A stretch of 64,000 nucleotides of DNA from Octopus bimaculoides (GCF_001194135.2 NC_068989.1:80946982-81010981); one strand, 5' to 3'; counted from the first letter of the stretch, positions 40,966 through 62,500 are shown. Translations and numbers: made by a program. Notes: generated from the sequence alone by a model not told the origin.

Positions 40966-41492
40966 CATATATTGTATATCAAACCCCAGCTGTTAGATTT
41001 AATTTGTTTATCTGCATAATTGCCTCTGTATCTGCTCATCTGGATTCCCTTTATAGCCACTCTTTACCTCACAGAATTGGTCTCTCATAAAGACATTGAA
41101 GTTTAAGCTCAAATCCTTTGACTGCTGCTAAGTGTTTTCTATACCAAGAACCTCTGGATCTCATCTGTTGACTCTGTATGTGTGTGTGTGTGTGTGTGTG
41201 TGTACGTACAACTGTTAAATTAGTTATGTCCCTTCTTTCGGGAAACTAACTTAGCCGTTTAACAAACAATGGTTTGATAAAATAACCACTGGACTGAATG
41301 GGTTGGCATGATAGACTACTAACCTTTAATGCAATGCTCCATCATGGCCATAATCCAGCAAGTGGAACTAACAAAAGAATAAAAGAACACAAAGGTTTGA
41401 TTGTTACTGAAACCAATATGATATTATTATTATTATTATATTTTTTCATATTCTTGTTTTTAATTTCTTTTTTTTTCTTTTTTTACAGAACA

Positions 41493-41834
41493 ATGACAGC
41501 CAGAGGACTTCATGAGAGTTGTCAAGGACCTTATCCTGGGTTTGATCTCCAGCCAAAGAATGCTCGTCCAATGTCGAATTCAAGGGTCCGTCCTGAAGCA
41601 GAGGAATATGCAACAATGCATAAAGGATCTTTAAATCTCTTTGAGTCTTCTTATTTTACAGGGAATAACGGTAATAATAATGTGAAATCCAGGTGCCCCT
41701 CACAAGCATCCCGAGAAAATTTAGTTTACAGCCGACAAGGATCTGTGAGTAAAATTATTCACTGCCAGGCCACCCCACGTCCTGACACTCCAAACCAAAC
41801 CCGAATCAGACCAGAAGCGTTGTCAATTGCTGAG
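41493..41834 (+). CDS. Uncharacterised repeat-containing protein, first coding exon
   Basis: Long polypyrimidine tract and acceptor ttttttacag|AACA (exon starts 41489), ATG in aacaATG context, donor GCTGAG|gtatgt (phase 0). 114 aa MTARGLHESCQGPYPGF...RVRPEAEEYATMHKGSLNLF...RIRPEALSIAE, non-repetitive DNA, open frame. Confidence 0.75.
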
Positions 41835-42788
41835 GTATGTAAACAAAAATGTATGCATGTGCATGTGTGTGTTTTTTCTTTGAGTTTTGCTAAAGTTCTT
41901 CTCAAAAGAGTTCATGCCAGTTGCTAACAAATTGACAAGACTTTTTGGGTTAAGAAAGTTCCTGGTATATGTAAATATGTGGTTGAATTGGCATGTTAGC
42001 TAAGTTGTTTATACATACACCCATCTTACAAATCTTCATTTTGACACTAATAGATAGGATTTGGAGAATGTGCATCAGTTTTTTCTGCTCTTTCTGTAAA
42101 AAAACATACTATACTCTTTTACTCTTTTACTNNNNNNNNNNNNNNNNNNNNNNNNNNNNNNNNNNNNNNNNNNNNNNNNNNNNNNNNNNNNNNNNNNNNN
42201 NNNNNNNNNNNNNNNNNNNNNNNNNNNNNNNNNNNNNNNNNNNNNNNNNNNNNNNNNNNNNNNNNNNNNNNNNNNNNNNNNNNNNNNNNNNNNNNNNNNN
42301 NNNNNNNNNNNNNNNNNNNNNNNNNNNNNNNNNNNNNNNNNNNNNNNNNNNNNNNNNNNNNNNNNNNNNNNNNNNNNNNNNNNNNNNNNNNNNNNNNNNN
42401 NNNNNNNNNNNNNNNNNNNNNNNNNNNNNNNNNNNNNNNNNNNNATATATATATGTATATATGCATATATATATACGACGGGCTTCTTTCAGTTTCCGTC
42501 TACCAATCCCACTCACAAGGCTTTGGTCGGCCCAAGGCTATAGTAGAAGACACTTGCCCAAGGTGCCATGCAGTGGAACTGAACCCGGAACCATGTGGTT
42601 CGTAAGCAAGCTACTTACCACACAGTCACTCCTACACCTATTCCTAGTTTTTATGTAAATTTGTTGGTACATTCCTGAAATGTACCTAGGTACAAGTGTA
42701 CCTTGTAGCTACAAATGAGGATTTACAGTCAGTGTACAAGAGATTTAAATTCTGCTTTAATTCACCACAAATGTTCTCCCTCTTTGTT

Positions 42789-42819
<31 letters not shown>

Positions 42820-43566
42820 TTGTGTGTGTGAAAACCAGATTAAGGGCTACTGATGCTCTATGTACAATCTAACAATGGCCTTCTCTCAGTACTTCCATTG
42901 TAGAAATGACAAGACAATGAGACACAATAAATGCTGAATGTGAAATATTAAATGAGAATTTTTGTTTTCTTCTAGGCTAATCCTCACAACTATATTAAAT
43001 ATAGCTTATTTTTCACCCACCAGGTTAATCCCCAAAATTATTTTAAATACAGCCTTGGTCCTTTTAACATGTACTTATTTTGTCTCATGTATAGTTGGGA
43101 CCTCATACATACACACATACATACATACATACAGACATACAGAAAGGCAGACAGACAGACAGACAGACAGAACCTGGTGGAGCCCTCTACTTGGTCTTTC
43201 TCTGTCAAATTGTCCAACCCATGTCAGCATGGAAAAAGGATGCTAAATGATGATAATGATATATATATATATATACAACAGCTGCAGTATTTTATATTTG
43301 CTTTGCATCCTGGAAGGGGTTGGACAGGTTGCTGCTTATTTGGAGTTGCTACCCTCCCAGCTATGATTAGGGGAACGTATTTATACATACATGTATATGT
43401 GTGTGTTTTGTATGTGGAGACAGTAATTTAAATAAACATGAATAGGCTTGATATATATAAATATACATATATACACGCTCACATATAGATACACACACAC
43501 ATAATGAGAGAGAGACTTACAAATAGCTAAATATATTCAGAAGATAAACACATATGTACAAGCATC

Positions 43567-43606
43567 GGCCATGACGAAGGGAAATAGCCCTGAAACTCGA
43601 GTCGCC
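43567..43606 (+). ncRNA. Minimal type I hammerhead-ribozyme-like motif, variant core
   Basis: GGC-CATGACGA-AGGG aaatag CCCT-GAAA-CTCGAG-TC-GCC. Stem I GGC/GCC, stem II 4 bp, palindromic stem III ACTCGAGT, GUC triplet. One extra nucleotide versus the canonical CUGANGA. Confidence 0.65.
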
Positions 43607-43988
43607 TTTATATATATATATTTATATTTATATATTTATATATTTGATCCTTTATATTGAACACTCAATATTTCATCTACATTCAATACTTTCTTTCATG
43701 GTGCCATCCATTTTTATTTTATTTTATTTTATATTGTATATTGTATATCATATTATATATTGTATATTCCATATTCTATACCCCACATTAGTTCTGCAGG
43801 AATANNNNNNNNNNNNNNNNNNNNNNNNNNNNNNNNNNNNNNNNNNNNNNNNNNNNNNNNNNNNNNNNNNNNNNNNNNNNNNNNNNNNNNNNNNNNNNNN
43901 NNNNNNNNNNNNNNNNNNNNNNNNNNNNNNNNNNNNNNNNNNNNNNNNNNNNNNNNNNNNTTAAAAGCAGCAGAAATATAACAAAAAG

Positions 43989-44026
43989 CTGTTACTCAGA
44001 GTTTCACGTTCCCGTTCATTGGACAG
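43989..44026 (-). ncRNA. Degenerate minimal type I hammerhead-like motif of a different family
   Basis: Minus strand CTGT-CCAATGA-ACG ggaa CGT-GAAA-CTC t GAG-TA-ACAG. All three stems pair; the core differs from CUGAUGA at 2 positions; GUA triplet. Confidence 0.55.
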
Positions 44027-46357
44027 TTTTGTTAGAAATGGGAGAGAAATGACAATGCAATCAAAACTAATATAAATTAAAAAACATGGATCTGTTTCAT
44101 TGGTCGTTTCAAATAACGGTCTTAGGTATGCAATGAACAAAATAAACAAAACAAATGAATTCAATATAGATTCATTCTATTTTTTTAAAAATCAAAGAAA
44201 ACCTTAAATTGAAAAGTGGGTTCAAAATACATATTGTAAATAATTATATTCGAATTAATAATAATTATATTCGAAACCTATAACCAATGAATTTATTGTT
44301 CCAAAACGGATGGTATAATTTGGAAAATATAAATTGTTGTGTGATTAAGAAGGTCACTTTGCAACCACATGGTAGTGGGTTCAGTCCCACTACATTGCAT
44401 CTTGGGCAAGTATCTTCTATAGCTCTGGGCTGACCATGCCTTGTGAGTAAATTTGGTAGACAGAAATTGTGTGGCAGACTGTCATACATACATATATATA
44501 AATGTATCTTTGTGTTTGTGTTTTTTGCATTTGTCCCCACCAACACTTGCCAACCAGTGTTGGTTTATTTTTGTCCCTATAACTTAGTGGTTTGGCAAAA
44601 GCATCTGGTAGAATAAGTTCCAGACTTTAAAATAGGTACTGGAGTTTTTTCAACTAAACCCTTCAAGGTGGTGCTCCAGCATGATCGCAGTCCAATGCCT
44701 GCAAAGCAAGTGAAAGATAAAAAGTAAATAGATGGATATAAACAGGTGAGTTAACTCACCTTTCAGAGTAATGTTAACACTGACACAAATCTATTGACTT
44801 TTTATATCAACAGTTTAGGGAGACTTGAAAAGAGCACCTTATGTTTTACCATATTTGAAGGCATACAAGATACATATAGCCCTGGTCCTATATGCAAAGT
44901 TGCTTTAAGTTTTTAAATGTTAATGCACTATTATTACCTCTTATCATCATCATCATCATCATTATCATCGTTTAACATCCACCTTCCATGCTACCTTGGA
45001 TAGGACGATTTCACAAAACCCGTCTAGGCAGAAGCCTGCACCAGACTTCTGCGACTGTTTTGGCAGGATTTCCACAGCTGGATGCCCTTCCTAGCACCAA
45101 CCACTCAGTAAGGCTATAGTAGAAGACACTTGCCCAAGGTGTCATGCAGTGGGTCTGGACCTGGAACCACGAGATTGGGAAGTAAGCTTCTTACCACACA
45201 GCCACACCTGCACACTAAATAACTTTTTTGCCATATATGTGCTGTGTTGAAATTAGGATGTTTCNNNNNNNNNNNNNNNNNNNNNNNNNNNNNNNNNNNN
45301 NNNNNNNNNNNNNNNNNNNNNNNNNNNNNNNNNNNNNNNNNNNNNNNNNNNNNNNNNNNNNNNNNNNNNNNNNNNNNNNNNNNNNNNNNNNNNNNNNNNN
45401 NNNNNNNNNNNNNNNNNNNNNNNNNNNNNNNNNNNNNNNNNNNNNNNNNNNNNNNNNNNNNNNNNNNNNNNNNNNNNNNNNNNNNNNNNNNNNNNNNNNN
45501 NNNNNNNNNNNNNNNNNNNNNNNNNNNNNNNNNNNNNNNNNNNNNNNNNNNNNNNNNNNNNNNNNNNNNNNNNNNNNNNNNNNNNNNNNNNNNNNNNNNN
45601 NNNNNNNNNNNNNNNNNNNNNNNNNNNNNNNNNNNNNNNNNNNNNNNNNNNNNNNNNNNNNNNNNNNNNNNNNNNNNNNNNNNNNNNNNNNNNNNNNNNN
45701 NNNNNNNNNNNNNNNNNNNNNNNNNNNNNNNNNNNNNNNNNNNNNNNNNNNNAAACATGCAACCGTCAGACATCTACCATACTCTGAACTCTTAGCATGG
45801 ACGCATTAAAGTTCCAAGGTCTGACAACTGATTTGTTAGTCACCCACAAGATATCACCTACCACCTTTCCAACAACAACCTTGAGCCACTTTTTGAATTT
45901 CAAATGTCTAATATTCATGGACATGCTTACAAAATAAATCGACCACATGACTGATTCTTTGTAAGCATAGTACTTATTCTATCAGTCTCTTTTGCCAAAC
46001 CACTTAGTCACAGGGATGTAAGCACACCAGCATCGGTTGTCAAGCAATGCTGGGGGCACAAACAGACACACAAACATATACACACACATACATGCATACA
46101 TACATACATACACACACACATATATATATATATACACATATAACGGGCTTCTTTCAGTTTCCGTCTACCAAATCCACTCACAGGGCTTTGGATGACCCAA
46201 GGTTATACTATAAGACACTTGCCCAAGGTGCCATGCAGTGGAACTGAACCCGGAACCATGTGGTTGGTAAGCAAGCTACTTACCACACAGCCACTCCTGA
46301 ATATTTTAATTGAAATCATGAAAATTCCTTCTCAATGTTTTTATATTTTGATTACAG

Positions 46358-46776
46358 GGGCTTCAATGGCTGCTATCTTGAGTCAACCCCCCAAAAGCAA
46401 GCCAGTTCCAACTGTGTTTCACATAAAAAATACAACAAACTCTTTATGCCTCTGGGAAAAGGCAGTCAACAGCATCACTAAAGGAGAGCAAATGAGAAAG
46501 GTACTGAGCAGCAACAACGATGCAGAAATAGCAGCAGCACCTGCAGCTCGGGTGAAAAGAGAAGGCCAGCATATATCAAATCTCGACAGAGGAGGCCGTA
46601 TGAACAAACTGATTTATGATACCAGCTCACTTCCAGCACCTATTAAACCAGTTCCCAGATGTGGCATGTCTAAAGTTGCCAAAAAGATAATGCAACAGAA
46701 TAGAGGTACTGTTGGAAGTCTTTTAACAAATTTGGCAAGCCATCAGATTGTTTTACAACCTGGAGTCAGAAGTTGA
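46358..46776 (+). CDS. Uncharacterised repeat-containing protein, terminal coding exon
   Basis: Acceptor ttatattttgattacag|GG (phase 1). Open frame ASMAAILSQPPK...ARVKREGQHISNLDRGGRMNKLI...PRCGMSKVAKKIMQQNRGTVGSLL...QPGVRS* with TGA at 46774-46776. Shares a repeat motif with exon 41493-41834. Confidence 0.7.
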
Positions 46777-47467
46777 GAAACTTATATCTAAGTTCATGCC
46801 TCTGGTTATCTATCTATCTATCTATCTACATACCTGTTTGTACACACACACACACACACACAAACATACACATGCATGCATACACACACACACATGCACG
46901 TGTGCACACATATATATTCTTTTACTTGTTTCAGTCATTAGACTCCCCACCAAAAAGAACAAACTAGATTTATTCAGTTTGATATCGGCTGCTATATAGA
47001 TTATTTATATATAATCAGTTGATATCAAACTGGATAAATTTCTCTCTCTCTTTCTGTCTCTCTCTATATATATATGCATACATGCATATATTTTCTTACC
47101 CACCTTATTCCCTCAACCATCATCCACCCCAAATATTTGTAACTGTGATTTGCAAAGCACATTCCATACACTGTCGTCCCTTTATCCCTATTTATTCTAC
47201 TACTAAATAAGTTAGAATAAGGGCGGAGGGCAGGTGGACTAGAGGGCACAAGCTTATGACTTTGAAGTGCTTTACCACCCGTTAGAGGCAAAAGGGGATC
47301 TTTTGGTAAAGAATTGCCTTTCTTTTTATTTATAAATGATTTTATTTCTTCTGTTCTTTTTTGTTATTTGTAGATCTATCATGCATAACATATAAGTGCT
47401 GTATACCTATAACACATAGGTAAATTATATGCATATTGCACTAATTACAGAAGTACTTAATGAACAG

Positions 47468-47726
47468 TTTGAAATAGGGCCTACATTTCACATCTGGTCT
47501 GGATCTAGTTGAAATAGTGCAAACATTTCAAATCTGTCCTGGGTCTATTACCATTTGAAATGGGCCTATGTTTTACATCTGTCTGAGACCTGCTACAAAC
47601 TGAGACGAGCTTGAATTTCACATCTGACCAGGGCCCACCATTTGAAATGGAACCTACATTTCACATCTGCACTGGGCCTATTACCAGTTGAAATGGAGCT
47701 TTCATTTCACATCTGACCCAGATTTG
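47468..47726. repeat. Degenerate minisatellite, ~6 units of 40-46 bp
   Basis: Unit consensus TTGAAATGG..CCTACATTTCACATCTG..CTGGG.CTATTACCA with an internal TGAAAT...ATTTCA dyad. Confidence 0.85.
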
Positions 47727-60367: not shown

Positions 60368-61971
60368 CTGGAGCAAGACAAACAAAATGGATTGGAAGAA
60401 ATTGTAAAGCCCAAGCAAGAAAATTAATGTAATTTTCATGAGCATTTGTAGCCAAGCAATTAAAATATAAACTTTCTTTTAATAATAATTATAAAAAGAA
60501 ACCAAAAAAAAAAAAAATGATTTCTGAGTAATAAATAACCTAAAGATGAGTGTTAATGGCAAGTTGTTATACTTACAATTGCAAACAGTATCAGAGCTCT
60601 GAGAAAGAGAGTATGAAATATAATTGTAACATTTGGATGGGGGGCAAAATTGTAAATGTTGAAACTATAATGATACACCATGAATCATCTATAACAGTAA
60701 TAGAAGAGAAGATGCAGTCAAAATAGTTGTTTTGGTACAGAATTTAAAACCAAGCCTCCTTAAATGTACTAAATATGTAATTGAGATAAATATTATAGGG
60801 TTTTACAATTTTGCTCAGTAACTGTTGGGCTGTGTATTTGTTTTTGTATTTATGGAGGAAGACAGAAGTATATAAAATTGGTTATTAGCTTACATAAGAA
60901 TTTTTTATATTTTTTCCTATGCATGAACAAAACCAGTAAAATGCAGCTCCTGTCCTAGTCTGTCAAAGCTAGATTTCAAATATTTAGTAAATTAAATCAC
61001 CCAGTAAATAAGCTTAATAATATAAAATATTTTCTTTTTCTTTTTTCATATCACATGGATATATATTTCCTTGGTTCACAGATTTGTCTCAGATAATCTA
61101 CAAACACTTGCAAAAGAAATTCTAAGCTTAAAAAAAAAATAATCATACTCCCAGTTTACCTCAATCAATTTAAAAGCATAATATGGTTTTAAACAATATT
61201 CATTAATGTATTTCAAGATTACATTAATGTAATAGTATGATCTAAACTATAGCTTATATAATCACATCATTATATGTTGAAACAACATAAGAAAATAACA
61301 AACAGGTTTAATTACCATCATTTTCACGCCTGTTCTTCCAAACTGGCATGGGTTGGGACTGGACGTTTTGGCACAGTTTTAACAACCAAACGCTCTTCCT
61401 GGTACCAGCCCTTTTAGTTGCGTTTTACGACACTCAAGTATAAACTGTACTTATCCCTGCATGTCATAAGAGGTGACTAAAAGGAGCTGGTGTTAAGAAG
61501 GCAGACTTTCAGTATTTCCAAATATCTTTTGCCAAATAATCAACAAACAGAACTAAGATTTTTGTTGCAAATACACAAAACTCTGATACTAAAATCAAAC
61601 TGTTAAAAACTGCAAAGTTTCTTGTCAAATCACTTAACTGCTGCAAGGAGTCTAACAACAAGTTTCCTCAACACACACACACATATATTATACTCTTACA
61701 CAAAGAGTGATGACAATGACTTCAAAGTTTTGGCTTGCTACCTCTCATCTGACAGTTTGTAGAAGGATAACAGGCCAAAACTTCAAAGTCACTGTAATTT
61801 CTCCTCCTGTAAAAGTATAAGTATTTTATAAAAAGTATTGCGTAATCCTTCAGTTCATTGTAAAATTGTTTTTATTGTAGTTCAAGGGAAAAACAAACAC
61901 ATATAAATGGTACCCAAAATAAAGATTAAGAGACTGGAGGTAAGAAAAGTTAAATGAATGAAAGCCTTTAC

Positions 61972-62097
61972 CTGATCGTCCACAATCACTGCAGGATACT
62001 AGGCCTTCTGGCTGACGCGTCTTCTTGTTCTCTTGTGAGTCTCCGAGGCAGAAATCACAGTAATTATTTGGAGCCACTTTGCCATCAATAGATTTTG
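61972..62097 (-). CDS. DPF: d4-family (DPF1/2/3, ubi-d4/BAF45) gene, exon encoding the start of PHD finger 1
   Basis: Minus-strand acceptor ttaatctttcag|CA and donor TCAG|gtaaag. 126 nt, phase 1 to phase 1. Encodes [41 protein letters not shown](G), matching the d4-family [10 protein letters not shown]...[18 protein letters not shown] signature. Upstream exons are not in the window. Confidence 0.95.
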
Positions 62098-62500
62098 CTG
62101 AAAGATTAACAAAAACAAAAATAAAAAAACTAAATGCTTGAAGACAGTGGGATGTAACTGAAGAAAGCACAACACTACACAACATGGCAAACTAGAATCC
62201 CATCTATGTTAACCCTGCCACCATTACACCCAGGCTGCAAGCAAGAAAGCAGTTACAGAACAGATAAGTTTAGAATTATTGTGCTATCAATTTCCTTGCT
62301 TAAAAAATTCATCCAGAAATTATCAATTATAACTGCTTTTAATGATAAATTCAAATATGTATCTGCATATTGTTTATATAAAGGTAAGATATTGTTCACC
62401 AGCACTTATCCAAACTAACAAAAAATTTGAAATAGCTTCGCACCTTTTCAAAACAGCCTCATTAATGAACATTTTGGGCCCCCATTGGGAAAGTAGATTT

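What the first reader, a model, noticed from the sequence alone, without database searches (positions are those of the whole stretch)
41489..46776. Unrecognised gene encoding a protein built from a short degenerate repeat (R-h-x-x-E-A-x3-A-x3-[RK]-G-x-h-x-x-h-h)
Seen, in two exons: SRVRPEAEEYATMHKGSLNLF, SRCPSQASRENLVYSRQGSVSKII, TRIRPEALSIAE|, |GASMAAIL, LWEKAVNSITKGEQMRKVL, ARVKREGQHISNLDRGGRMNKLI and PRCGMSKVAKKIMQQNRGTVGSLL, separated by Pro/Ser/Asn-rich linkers at roughly 35-50 aa spacing. I recognise no named domain. Inference: short helical motifs in disordered linkers resemble the architecture of ciliary or sperm microtubule-inner and filament-binding repeat proteins (SAXO/FAM166-type organisation, but not their motifs). 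It may be an uncharacterised family.
Basis: partly seen in the sequence, partly recalled or inferred. Interest (0 to 1): 0.7.

Follow-up and report, generated by a model that had tools for sequence, protein, structure and literature searches.

The report
Octopus repeat protein related to ENKD1
This is a real, conserved octopus gene, missing one exon in an assembly gap, whose protein is a string of eight short repeats matching the microtubule-binding end of the cilium protein ENKD1, so it probably binds microtubules.

Summary
The two exons are real: 41489-41834 and 46358-46776. Between this window and O. vulgaris, dN/dS is 0.155. They cannot be spliced to each other: exon A ends in phase 0, the last exon starts in phase 1, and a direct join stops after 7 codons. 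In O. vulgaris a 205-nt exon lies between them. Colinear anchors place it inside the gap 45265-45752.

The full protein is about 321 aa with pI about 10. AlphaFold gives no globular fold (pLDDT 50-55). It has eight repeats of about 36 aa with the consensus P-R-V-[KR]-P-E-A-x3-A-x3-[KR]-G-x-x-M-x-x-L-L. The gene is annotated only as "uncharacterized LOC106867260". No Pfam or PDB sequence match was found.

Orthologues occur across molluscs. Related stand-alone repeat proteins occur in brachiopod, nemertean, rotifer and flatworm species.

The same motif forms the N-terminal region of ENKD1 orthologues (hhalign 98.5%, E 2e-15). Tunicates have 3 copies, a ctenophore several, and Lingula and non-mammalian vertebrates one. 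Published work shows that the N-terminal ENKD1 fragments, not the enkurin domain, bind microtubules, and that ENKD1 is an inner protein of the transition-zone doublet.

The most likely function is a microtubule-lattice-binding repeat protein. This is inferred, not shown.

The parts
41489..41834 (+). Coding exon A (start codon at 41493; 114 codons; ends in phase 0). It encodes the conserved PYPGFD box, repeat 1, repeat 2 and the N-half of repeat 3.
   Evidence: Splice sites read directly. tblastn of O. vulgaris, Argonauta, squid and Pomacea proteins matches here. With the last exon, 240 of 253 aa are identical to O. vulgaris and dN/dS is 0.155.
41580..41642 (+). Repeat 1: SRVRPEAEEYATMHKGSLNLF
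   Evidence: Gastropod-only HMM, domain E 1.5e-5. ENKD1-only HMM, domain E 1.1e-5.
41688..41759 (+). Repeat 2 (degenerate): SRCPSQASRENLVYSRQGSVSKII
   Evidence: It aligns with the conserved PRCPSxExRxNYExxRxGTVxxLL unit of all mollusc orthologues, 36 aa after repeat 1. The repeat HMM detects the equivalent unit in Pomacea at residue 61.
41799..41834 (+). N-half of repeat 3: TRIRPEALSIAE. Its C-half (SQKGNAMANLL in O. vulgaris) lies in the missing exon.
   Evidence: domain E 0.12 for the truncated half.
45265..45752 (+). Assembly gap that hides the 205-nt middle coding exon. That exon carries the C-half of repeat 3, degenerate repeat 4 and the N-half of repeat 5. It starts in phase 0 and ends with the first base of the next codon (the last exon starts in phase 1).
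   Evidence: The O. vulgaris exon is at L001 47443-47647. Colinear anchors are L001 47185-47338 = window 45109-45264 and L001 47742-47931 = window 45753-45938. tblastn finds no match in the readable window.
46358..46776 (+). Last coding exon (starts in phase 1; TGA at 46774-46776). It encodes the C-half of repeat 5, repeats 6-8 and the conserved C-terminal QIVLQPGVRS.
   Evidence: The stop position is conserved in O. vulgaris and Argonauta.
46358..46380 (+). C-half of repeat 5: (G)ASMAAIL. Its N-half (PRVKPEAKVTAEAAK in O. vulgaris) lies in the missing exon.
46450..46506 (+). Repeat 6 (degenerate): LWEKAVNSITKGEQMRKVL
   Evidence: It aligns with gastropod repeat PRVKQEAAEMASMDRGGRMQNLL. Only the KGEQMRKVL half is weakly detected by the HMM in O. 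vulgaris and Argonauta.
46546..46614 (+). Repeat 7: ARVKREGQHISNLDRGGRMNKLI
   Evidence: Gastropod-only HMM, domain E 1e-7.
46654..46725 (+). Repeat 8 (degenerate N-half): PRCGMSKVAKKIMQQNRGTVGSLL
   Evidence: It aligns with PRxxSxxAKxIxxxNRGxxGxIL, which is conserved in all mollusc orthologues.
35661..35733 (+). Probable 5' untranslated exon used by the old RefSeq model (donor CAG|GTATTC after 35733). Its 5' end is lost in gap 35489-35660.
   Evidence: P0004 begins MSVKVLSAIVILILIR, spliced to 41489. The ATG at 35687 is ATT in O. vulgaris, although the region is 95% identical.
16580..16623 (+). Possible first (5') exon, conserved with the first exon of the O. vulgaris gene model (donor TAG|GTGACG).
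   Evidence: tblastn 11 of 14 aa. blastn gives 90% identity over 401 nt to L001 9820-10207. Sequence read. Whether it is coding is doubtful.

Best explanation
The locus is the incompletely assembled octopus gene LOC106867260. Its mRNA joins exon A (41489-41834), a 205-nt exon lost in the gap 45265-45752, and the last exon (46358-46776). Non-coding 5' exons lie further upstream.

The product is about 321 aa, basic (pI about 10) and hydrophilic. It has no signal peptide and is predicted to be intrinsically disordered.

The protein consists of a PYPGFD box followed by eight tandem units of about 36 aa. Each unit has three parts:
- a basic P-R-V-[KR]-P-E-A entry;
- about 20 residues predicted as helix-Gly-helix (EAxxxAxxx[KR]G-xxMxxLL);
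- a Pro-rich linker of about 15 residues.

The units are homologous to the motif that makes up the N-terminal region of ENKD1, and N-terminal ENKD1 fragments carry the microtubule binding. The gene belongs to a family of stand-alone repeat-only paralogues seen in molluscs, a brachiopod, a nemertean, a rotifer and flatworms. These lack ENKD1's central region and enkurin domain.

Inferred mechanism: each unit docks on the tubulin lattice. The basic head and amphipathic helices contact tubulin, and the linker spans to the next site. The array would then lie along a microtubule and bind successive tubulin subunits or dimers. One fully extended unit could reach about 8 nm. The protein would stabilise or mark axonemal, centriolar or other stable microtubules.

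Shown: gene structure, purifying selection, the repeat, and homology to the ENKD1 N-terminal region.
Inferred: tubulin binding, one unit per lattice period, and a ciliary or centriolar location.
For: **Gene structure**
- Splice sites, phases and the missing exon.
- Purifying selection: dS 0.162, dN 0.025, dN/dS 0.155 against O. vulgaris.

**Orthologues and the repeat**
- Orthologues with all eight units in the same order occur in cephalopods, gastropods, bivalves and a chiton.
- The family has 155 representative clusters at E<=1e-3.
- The repeat period mode is 35-36 aa. Pomacea units start at residues 25, 61, 97, 133, 169, 205 and 241.

**Link to ENKD1**
- Proteins with the motif at the N-terminus carry Pfam Enkurin PF13864 at the C-terminus. 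One of them (P0105) matches ENKD1 in PDB 11yj_8A at E 2e-40, and ENKD1-named orthologues (Ciona, Styela, vertebrates) were found with the ENKD1-like profile.
- An HMM built from stand-alone units only finds 3 copies in Ciona, Styela and Clavelina ENKD1 (domain E 1e-9 to 6e-15). It finds 1 copy in Lingula (2e-8), several in Mnemiopsis (best 1e-9), and 1 each in Polypterus, quail and frog (1.4e-4 to 3.5e-3).
- hhalign of the octopus-family profile against the ENKD1-like profile gives probability 98.5% and E 2e-15 over 159 columns, with three repeats in register.
- Human ENKD1 residues 59-84 align positionally with the motif.

**Literature**
- ENKD1 fragments 1-150 and 1-250 co-pellet with and bundle microtubules. 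Fragment 250-346 (enkurin domain) does not (bioRxiv 10.1101/2021.07.20.453048).
- ENKD1 is a luminal inner protein of the transition-zone doublet with an 8-nm repeat (bioRxiv 10.64898/2026.06.11.731632).
- ENKD1 is present in a sea-anemone ciliome (bioRxiv 10.1101/153437).

**Physical properties**
- pI 9.99, GRAVY -0.74, and no hydrophobic run of 7 or more residues.
- AlphaFold pLDDT is 49.8 and 55.2, and pTM is 0.15. Each unit shows short helices separated by non-helical linkers.
Against: - There is no direct evidence that this protein or any stand-alone family member binds microtubules. No expression, localisation or proteomic data were found.
- The ENKD1 experiments map binding to fragments 1-150 and 1-250, not to the motif itself. 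Fragment 1-150 bundled microtubules much less than fragment 1-250.
- The mammalian copy of the motif is so degenerate that the HMM does not detect it in human ENKD1.
- I could not see which ENKD1 residues are modelled in PDB 11yj.
- No match to any chain of the solved axonemal doublets. If it is an inner protein, it is not one already seen in those structures.
- Half of the octopus units (2, 4, 6, 8) are degenerate.
Confidence: 0.6

Rival explanations
1. The repeat is a docking motif for a non-tubulin partner. Candidates are a CEP41-like, calmodulin-like, ezrin/actin-related or enzyme partner. The protein would then be a multivalent disordered scaffold rather than a lattice binder.
For: - Each of the eight units has its own position-specific conservation across molluscs. 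This would suit several different partners.
- ENKD1 forms its 8-nm unit together with CEP41 and has several reported non-tubulin interactors (titles and abstracts).
- The motif itself has never been mapped as the tubulin-contacting element.
Against: - The only mapped activity of the ENKD1 region that holds the motif is microtubule binding and bundling.
- High pI and a periodic array of about 36 aa are typical of lattice-binding proteins.
- No PP1 RVxF-type, IQ, WH2, RPEL or nebulin signature was detected by Pfam.
Confidence: 0.25
2. The eight repeats fold together into a compact alpha-solenoid domain of unknown function, rather than acting as separate linear motifs.
For: The tandem repeats are regular at about 36 aa, and each is predicted as helix-break-helix.
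Against: - AlphaFold gives pTM 0.15 and mean pLDDT 50-55, even with 18 orthologues.
- The linkers are Pro/Ser/Gly-rich and vary in length: cephalopod spacing is 65-78 aa over two units.
- Copy number ranges from 1 in Lingula and non-mammalian vertebrate ENKD1 to 8. A solenoid would not tolerate that.
Confidence: 0.05
3. It is a secreted or peptide-precursor protein, as repeated short peptides in a mollusc gene might suggest. The upstream hydrophobic ORF (MSVKVLSAIVILILIR) of the old RefSeq model would serve as signal peptide.
For: The old model P0004 starts with a hydrophobic 16-mer encoded at 35687-35733.
Against: - That ATG is ATT in O. vulgaris.
- Squid, Argonauta and gastropod proteins start near MTARG/PYPGFD without any hydrophobic segment.
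- No dibasic cleavage or amidation sites flank the repeats.
- The motif is shared with the cytoskeletal protein ENKD1.
Confidence: 0.03
4. It is not a functional gene here: a pseudogene, or a chance ORF pair among repeats.
For: The direct exon join is out of frame. The intron is full of SINEs and gaps.
Against: - Both exons are intact and under purifying selection (dN/dS 0.155).
- The frame problem is fully explained by the exon hidden in the gap.
- Orthologues extend across Mollusca.
Confidence: 0.02

Closest known systems
ENKD1 (enkurin domain-containing protein 1, C16orf48): centriole/cilium microtubule-associated protein and transition-zone doublet inner protein
   Same: - The repeat unit P-R-V-[KR]-P-E-A-x3-A-x3-[KR]-G-x-x-h-x-x-L-L is the same motif that builds the ENKD1 N-terminal region. 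Tunicates have 3 copies, a ctenophore several, and Lingula and non-mammalian vertebrates 1.
- The preceding GP[YIL]PGF[DE] box also recurs by eye.
- N-terminal ENKD1 fragments (1-150, 1-250) bind microtubules.
   Different: - The octopus protein has no central KALW/KDHxKEN region and no C-terminal Enkurin domain (Pfam none). A conserved stop follows repeat 8.
- It has eight units instead of one to three.
- Lingula has both an ENKD1 (P0215) and a stand-alone repeat protein (P0031). The octopus gene is therefore a paralogous family, not an ENKD1 orthologue.
Tau/MAP2/MAP4 tubulin-binding repeats (Pfam PF00418)
   Same: Both are basic, disordered proteins with tandem units of about 31-36 aa containing a [KR]-x-G-S-x-x-N-[IL]-like core. 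Each tau repeat lies along a protofilament (my own knowledge).
   Different: There is no sequence relationship: no Pfam hit at E<=10. The motif, the helical propensity and the period (36 against 31-32 aa) all differ.
SAXO/MAP6 (Mn modules) and FAM166/CIMIP2 microtubule inner proteins
   Same: The general organisation is the same: short conserved modules in disordered linkers, with a ciliary microtubule association.
   Different: No Pfam match to STOP/SAXO or FAM166 families. No match to any chain of the solved axonemal doublets.
Nebulin repeats (about 35 aa, actin-filament ruler)
   Same: A tandem helical unit of about 35-36 aa that could measure along a polymer.
   Different: No SDxxYK motif and no Pfam hit. 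The homology points to a microtubule protein, not an actin one.

Membership tests
ENKD1 orthologue | C-terminal Enkurin domain (Pfam PF13864) | tested here: not met
   Pfam scan of the exon translations and of the joined protein finds no family at E<=10. The ORF ends at a conserved stop right after repeat 8. True ENKD1-like proteins score 50-80 bits.
ENKD1 orthologue | Central conserved region (KDHxKENxxRxRxIQ ... PVKALWKSxKY) | tested here: not met
   It is absent from all mollusc orthologues. The hhalign match covers only ENKD1-like columns 15-178, which is the N-terminal repeat region.
ENKD1 N-terminal motif (shared module; no Pfam model) | P-R-V-[KR]-P-E-A-x3-A-x3-[KR]-G-x-x-h-x-x-L-L unit preceded by a Pro-rich linker | tested here: met
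   The ENKD1-only unit HMM hits exon A at E 3.6e-9. The stand-alone-only HMM hits ENKD1 proteins at domain E down to 6e-15. hhalign gives 98.5%, E 2e-15.
ENKD1 N-terminal motif (shared module; no Pfam model) | Binds microtubules | not testable with these tools
   Only ENKD1 fragments 1-150 and 1-250 have been tested experimentally. No data exist for this protein.
Mollusc LOC106867260 orthologue group | PYPGFD box, eight ordered units and a C-terminal QIVxxPGxR, about 320 aa in total | tested here: met
   Alignment of 18 cephalopod, gastropod, bivalve and chiton proteins. The window encodes all parts except those in the missing exon.
SAXO / MAP6 (STOP) family | Mn/Mc modules recognised by the Pfam STOP/SAXO models | tested here: not met
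   No Pfam hit at E<=10.
FAM166 / CIMIP2 | Pfam FAM166/DUF2475-type domain | tested here: not met
   No Pfam hit at E<=10.
Tau/MAP2/MAP4 | Tubulin-binding repeat PF00418 | tested here: not met
   No Pfam hit at E<=10.
Microtubule inner proteins of solved axonemal or transition-zone structures | Sequence match to a modelled chain in the PDB | tested here: not met
   The family profile A1 gives only a chance hit at E 1.1. The unit profile A2 gives none at E<=10.

The most novel reading that the evidence does not exclude
The repeat defines a previously undescribed, ancient tubulin-lattice-binding motif. It is present from ctenophore to vertebrate ENKD1. Molluscs, brachiopods, nemerteans, rotifers and flatworms have turned it into a family of stand-alone proteins with up to eight units. 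These would lie along axonemal or centriolar microtubules with one unit per lattice period, acting as a longitudinal stabiliser or ruler. The position-specific conservation of each unit would reflect distinct docking sites, as for inner proteins of doublet microtubules.
Probability: 0.35. Interest if true: 0.65.

Novelty: new variant of a known kind. Interest (0 to 1): 0.5.

Why it matters
**A candidate binding element for ENKD1.** ENKD1's microtubule binding has been mapped only to large N-terminal fragments. The homology found here points to a concrete conserved motif of about 25 residues as the candidate tubulin-binding element. Natural arrays of 3 to 8 copies would be convenient tools for structural work on microtubules.

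**A hypothesis for an unannotated family.** More than 150 sequence clusters of "uncharacterized" animal proteins (named members are spiralian) gain a testable hypothesis about ciliary or centriolar microtubule function.

**Annotation.** The O. bimaculoides gene models at this locus (P0001, P0003, P0004) are artefacts of an exon lost in an assembly gap. They read through intron or SINE sequence, or use an aberrant 3' exon.

Tried and rejected
- **Pfam scans** of the exon translations, the joined protein and ten diverse family members gave nothing significant.
- **PDB sequence searches** with the family profile and the unit profile gave nothing.
A 66-aa double-unit profile found only 5 short fragments, so that search was largely wasted.
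- **Unit HMM against human ENKD1 residues 1-115** gave no hit, even with filters off. The human copy is supported only by positional alignment.
- **Literature searches** for the locus names of six orthologues and for the motif strings found nothing relevant.
- **Fold search** was not run. Both AlphaFold models are low-confidence (pLDDT 50-55, pTM 0.15), and matches would be meaningless.
- **An alternative in-frame donor** at 41838|41839 (TAT|GTAAAC, giving ...IAEVW-ASMAAIL) was considered as a way to join the two exons directly. I rejected it because all orthologues contain the extra 68 residues and O. vulgaris uses GAG|GTATGT.
- **The upstream ATG at 35687** was considered as the start codon. 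I rejected it because it is not conserved.
- **Hits P0140 and P0150** (low-complexity proteins) were disregarded. **P0180** (a P5-ATPase fusion) looks like a gene-model fusion. None was used.

Full report
**What the window is.** The window has 36% G+C, many N gaps, microsatellites and tRNA-like SINEs. The best protein matches are Octopus bimaculoides models of "uncharacterized protein LOC106867260".

**Observation.**
- Exon A starts after the acceptor ttacag at 41489. The ATG is at 41493, and the exon ends at 41834 before GTATGT.
- The last exon starts at 46358 after ttacag and ends with TGA at 46774-46776.

**Frame test across the gaps.** Exon A ends in phase 0. The conserved frame of the last exon needs one base from the previous exon. 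A direct join reads ...SIAE|GLQWLLS*.
- The O. vulgaris orthologue (P0002, 342 aa) has 68 extra residues between the two parts.
- Its locus (L001) has a 205-nt exon at 47443-47647. The acceptor is tatag|AGCCAG (phase 0) and the donor is AAAG|gtatgt, one base into the next codon.
- tblastn finds no copy of this exon in the readable window.
- Colinear blastn anchors run L001 47185-47338 = window 45109-45264, then L001 47742-47931 = window 45753-45938. The 403 bp of O. vulgaris that contain the exon therefore correspond exactly to the gap 45265-45752.
- The gap 42132-42444 sits where O. vulgaris has no extra sequence, next to a SINE in the window. The gap 43805-43960 is intronic, with no exon of the O. 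vulgaris protein at the corresponding place.
- The published O. bimaculoides models bridge the hole by translating intron or SINE sequence (P0001) or by using odd splice sites (P0003, P0004).

**A real gene.** Across the 253 alignable codons, 240 residues are identical to O. vulgaris. dS is 0.162, dN is 0.025 and dN/dS is 0.155. The upstream ATG of the old RefSeq model (35687, MSVKVLSAIVILILIR) is ATT in O. vulgaris, although the surrounding DNA is 95% identical. That exon is therefore 5' UTR, and 41493 is the start codon.

**The repeat.**
- An HMM built from gastropod units only picks out exactly the two exons among 2026 six-frame segments (E 1.7e-8 and 9e-8; next best 1.3).
- In Pomacea the units start at residues 25, 61, 97, 133, 169, 205 and 241, a strict 36-aa lattice.
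- Over 598 units in the collected proteins, the modal spacing is 35-36 aa. A second mode at 71-73 arises where a degenerate unit is skipped.
- An alignment of 18 cephalopod, gastropod, bivalve and chiton proteins shows a PYPGFD box, eight units in fixed order each with its own conserved flavour, and a C-terminal QIVxxPGxR.
- In octopus, units 1, 3, 5 and 7 are canonical and units 2, 4, 6 and 8 are degenerate.

**Physical character.** I combined the two window exons with the O. vulgaris middle exon for this calculation only. That gives 321 aa, pI 9.99, GRAVY -0.74 and no hydrophobic run of 7 or more residues. AlphaFold with 7 and with 18 sequences gives pLDDT 49.8 and 55.2, and pTM 0.15. Each unit is predicted as roughly 20 residues of helix-break-helix followed by a non-helical Pro-rich linker. 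There is no globular fold, so I did not run fold searches.

**Relatives.** Pfam finds nothing. A full HMMER profile search of 1.84 billion representative proteins finds 155 proteins at E<=1e-3 and 85 at E<=1e-10.
- Named members come from gastropods, bivalves, a chiton, the brachiopod Lingula, the nemertean Tubulanus, a bdelloid rotifer, and Schistosoma and Spirometra.
- One comes from a transcriptome labelled as the apicomplexan Siedleckia. This may be contamination from its polychaete host (my own guess, not tested).
- Every named member is "uncharacterized" or "hypothetical".
- Many further members are unnamed metatranscriptome ORFs.

**The key link.** Three hits (P0103, P0105, P0133) carry three copies of the motif at the N-terminus and a Pfam Enkurin domain at the C-terminus. 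P0105 matches "Enkurin domain-containing protein 1" in PDB entry 11yj chain 8A at E 2e-40. A search with these proteins returned ENKD1 orthologues named as such, from Ciona, Styela, fishes, frogs, a lizard, a bird, Lingula and Phytophthora, plus a Mnemiopsis homologue annotated as a hypothetical protein.
- An HMM built only from stand-alone units detects 3 copies in each tunicate ENKD1 (domain E 1e-9 to 6e-15).
- It detects one copy in Lingula ENKD1 (2e-8) and several in the ctenophore protein (best 1e-9).
- It detects one copy at the equivalent position in Polypterus, quail, frog and lizard (1.4e-4 to 0.03).
- Conversely, an HMM built only from ENKD1 units hits window exon A at E 3.6e-9.
- The ENKD1-like profile recovers stand-alone mollusc proteins such as Pinctada P0247.
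- hhalign of the two family profiles gives 98.5% probability and E 2e-15 over 159 columns, with three units in register.
- Human ENKD1 is not detected by the HMM. I recalled its sequence from memory and verified it as identical to 11yj_8A residues 1-115. Its residues 59-84 (PCIGPGAGEILERGQRGVGDVLLQLEG) align column for column with PRVRPNATDILERSKKGSVGNLLQLEG of Polypterus and PRVKPEASHIATAQQGGSIGFMLGITG of Lingula. This segment lies just upstream of the conserved KDHEKEN box.
- Lingula has both an ENKD1 and a stand-alone protein, so the octopus gene is a paralogue family, not a truncated ENKD1.

**What is known about that region.**
- GFP-ENKD1 1-150 and 1-250 co-pellet with microtubules and bundle them. 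The enkurin fragment 250-346 does not. The authors conclude that only the N-terminal region binds microtubules (bioRxiv 10.1101/2021.07.20.453048).
- A 2026 cryo-ET preprint assigns ENKD1 as a luminal inner protein of the bovine transition-zone doublet. It spans protofilaments A13-A11 with 8-nm periodicity, together with CEP41 (bioRxiv 10.64898/2026.06.11.731632).
- ENKD1 was found in a sea-anemone ciliome and at the base of mammalian cilia (bioRxiv 10.1101/153437).
- I found no paper that describes the motif or the stand-alone family.

**Mechanism (inferred).** I propose a basic, disordered chain of eight docking units that binds the acidic tubulin lattice, one unit per lattice period.
- About 20 helical residues (about 3 nm) plus about 16 linker residues (up to about 5 nm) could just span an 8-nm dimer repeat. 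They could comfortably span 4 nm.
- Each unit is conserved in a position-specific way across molluscs. This fits fixed, non-equivalent docking sites, as seen for doublet inner proteins. It fits a partner-scaffold model equally well.

**Rivals.** These are a multivalent scaffold for a non-tubulin partner, a folded solenoid (which AlphaFold argues against), a secreted peptide precursor (no conserved signal peptide or cleavage sites), and a pseudogene (purifying selection argues against). Details are in the rival list.

**Comparison and novelty.** The gene is annotated but uncharacterised.
- It is not a member of ENKD1: the enkurin domain and central region were tested and are absent.
- It is not SAXO/MAP6, FAM166, tau/MAP2/MAP4 or nebulin: no Pfam hit.
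- It matches no inner protein in the solved structures.
- It shares one module with ENKD1 and probably works like that module.
- I rate it a new variant of a known kind: a repeat-only derivative of the ENKD1 N-terminal microtubule-binding region.
- Interest is moderate. The function is inferred only by homology, but the link gives ENKD1 a candidate tubulin-binding motif and gives a large "uncharacterized" family a testable function.

Noticed in passing
window 42445-42637(+), 46120-46299(+), 45109-45210(+), 44346-44500(-): There are several copies of the same roughly 180-bp SINE-like element inside the large intron (…GGGCTTCTTTCAGTTTCCGTCTACCAAATCCACTCACAAGGCTTTGG…GGAACTGAACCCGGAACCATGTGGTT…). 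RefSeq model P0001 translates one of them as if it were coding.
   Followed up: partly
window 46705|46706 donor and exon from 47374: The older O. bimaculoides models (P0003, P0004) splice from inside the last exon (AGAG|GTACTG) to a downstream exon that encodes DLSCITYKCCIPITHR. This removes the conserved end of repeat 8 and the QIVLQPGVRS tail. It is either a minor isoform or a model artefact.
   Followed up: partly
window 16580-16623 and 35661-35733: Two upstream exons are used by different gene models as 5' ends of this gene. If they are real, the transcription unit spans at least 30 kb, mostly transposon debris and gaps. The 35687 ATG is not conserved in O. vulgaris.
   Followed up: partly
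window 21903-22271(-), 24108-24497(+), 31687-31941(+): Transposable-element remnants lie here: a DDE_3 transposase fragment (E 4e-12), an ORF with a PHD-type zinc finger next to gap 24498-25202, and a reverse-transcriptase RVT_1 fragment (E 3e-8) next to gap 31944-32530.
   Followed up: partly
window 61850-62185(-): This ORF contains ...[33 protein letters not shown]..., which looks like part of a PHD finger of a DPF/requiem-type gene. In O. vulgaris the downstream neighbour on the minus strand carries DPF1-3_N and PHD domains, so synteny seems conserved. Pfam gave no hit on this partial exon.
   Followed up: partly
related proteins P0006, P0007, P0013, P0024, P0025, P0031, P0032, P0034, P0037, P0065: Many family members end with a tryptophan as the very last residue (…NSQW, …NKMW, …TKLW, …SNDW, …SENW, …SELW, …TSKW, …SAMW, …TTWW). 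The octopus proteins do not. The meaning is unknown.
   Followed up: no
related proteins P0038, P0040, P0041, P0043, P0044, P0050, P0112, P0119: A longer subfamily of about 450-500 aa has an N-terminal half built from a variant unit. In it the motif's tail is replaced by D-W-[FY]-x-H (HPRTRPEAEDYAxKNRxTNDWFRHDGKNVE, …EAWYKHEENxNY…), followed by canonical units. The source organisms are mostly unnamed; one comes from a transcriptome labelled Siedleckia.
   Followed up: no
related proteins P0031, P0065 (P0031 = Lingula), P0019, P0045, P0076: Some members carry additional short boxes flanking the repeat array, of the form [ED]-[ST]-[FY]-x-[KR]-R-N-x-[ST]-T (…ESFDKRNKTTS…, …SESFHRRNATTWW). This is a second, unexplained motif.
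   Followed up: no
ENKD1 orthologues P0203, P0207, P0214, P0217 (N-terminal regions): In ENKD1 each copy of the motif is preceded by a GP[IL]xxDPx[YF] box. Vertebrates keep two such boxes (GPIPPDPTLFPDYY, GPLAPDPTLYPGCY) but only one recognisable motif copy. This suggests that copies were lost in the vertebrate lineage.
   Followed up: partly
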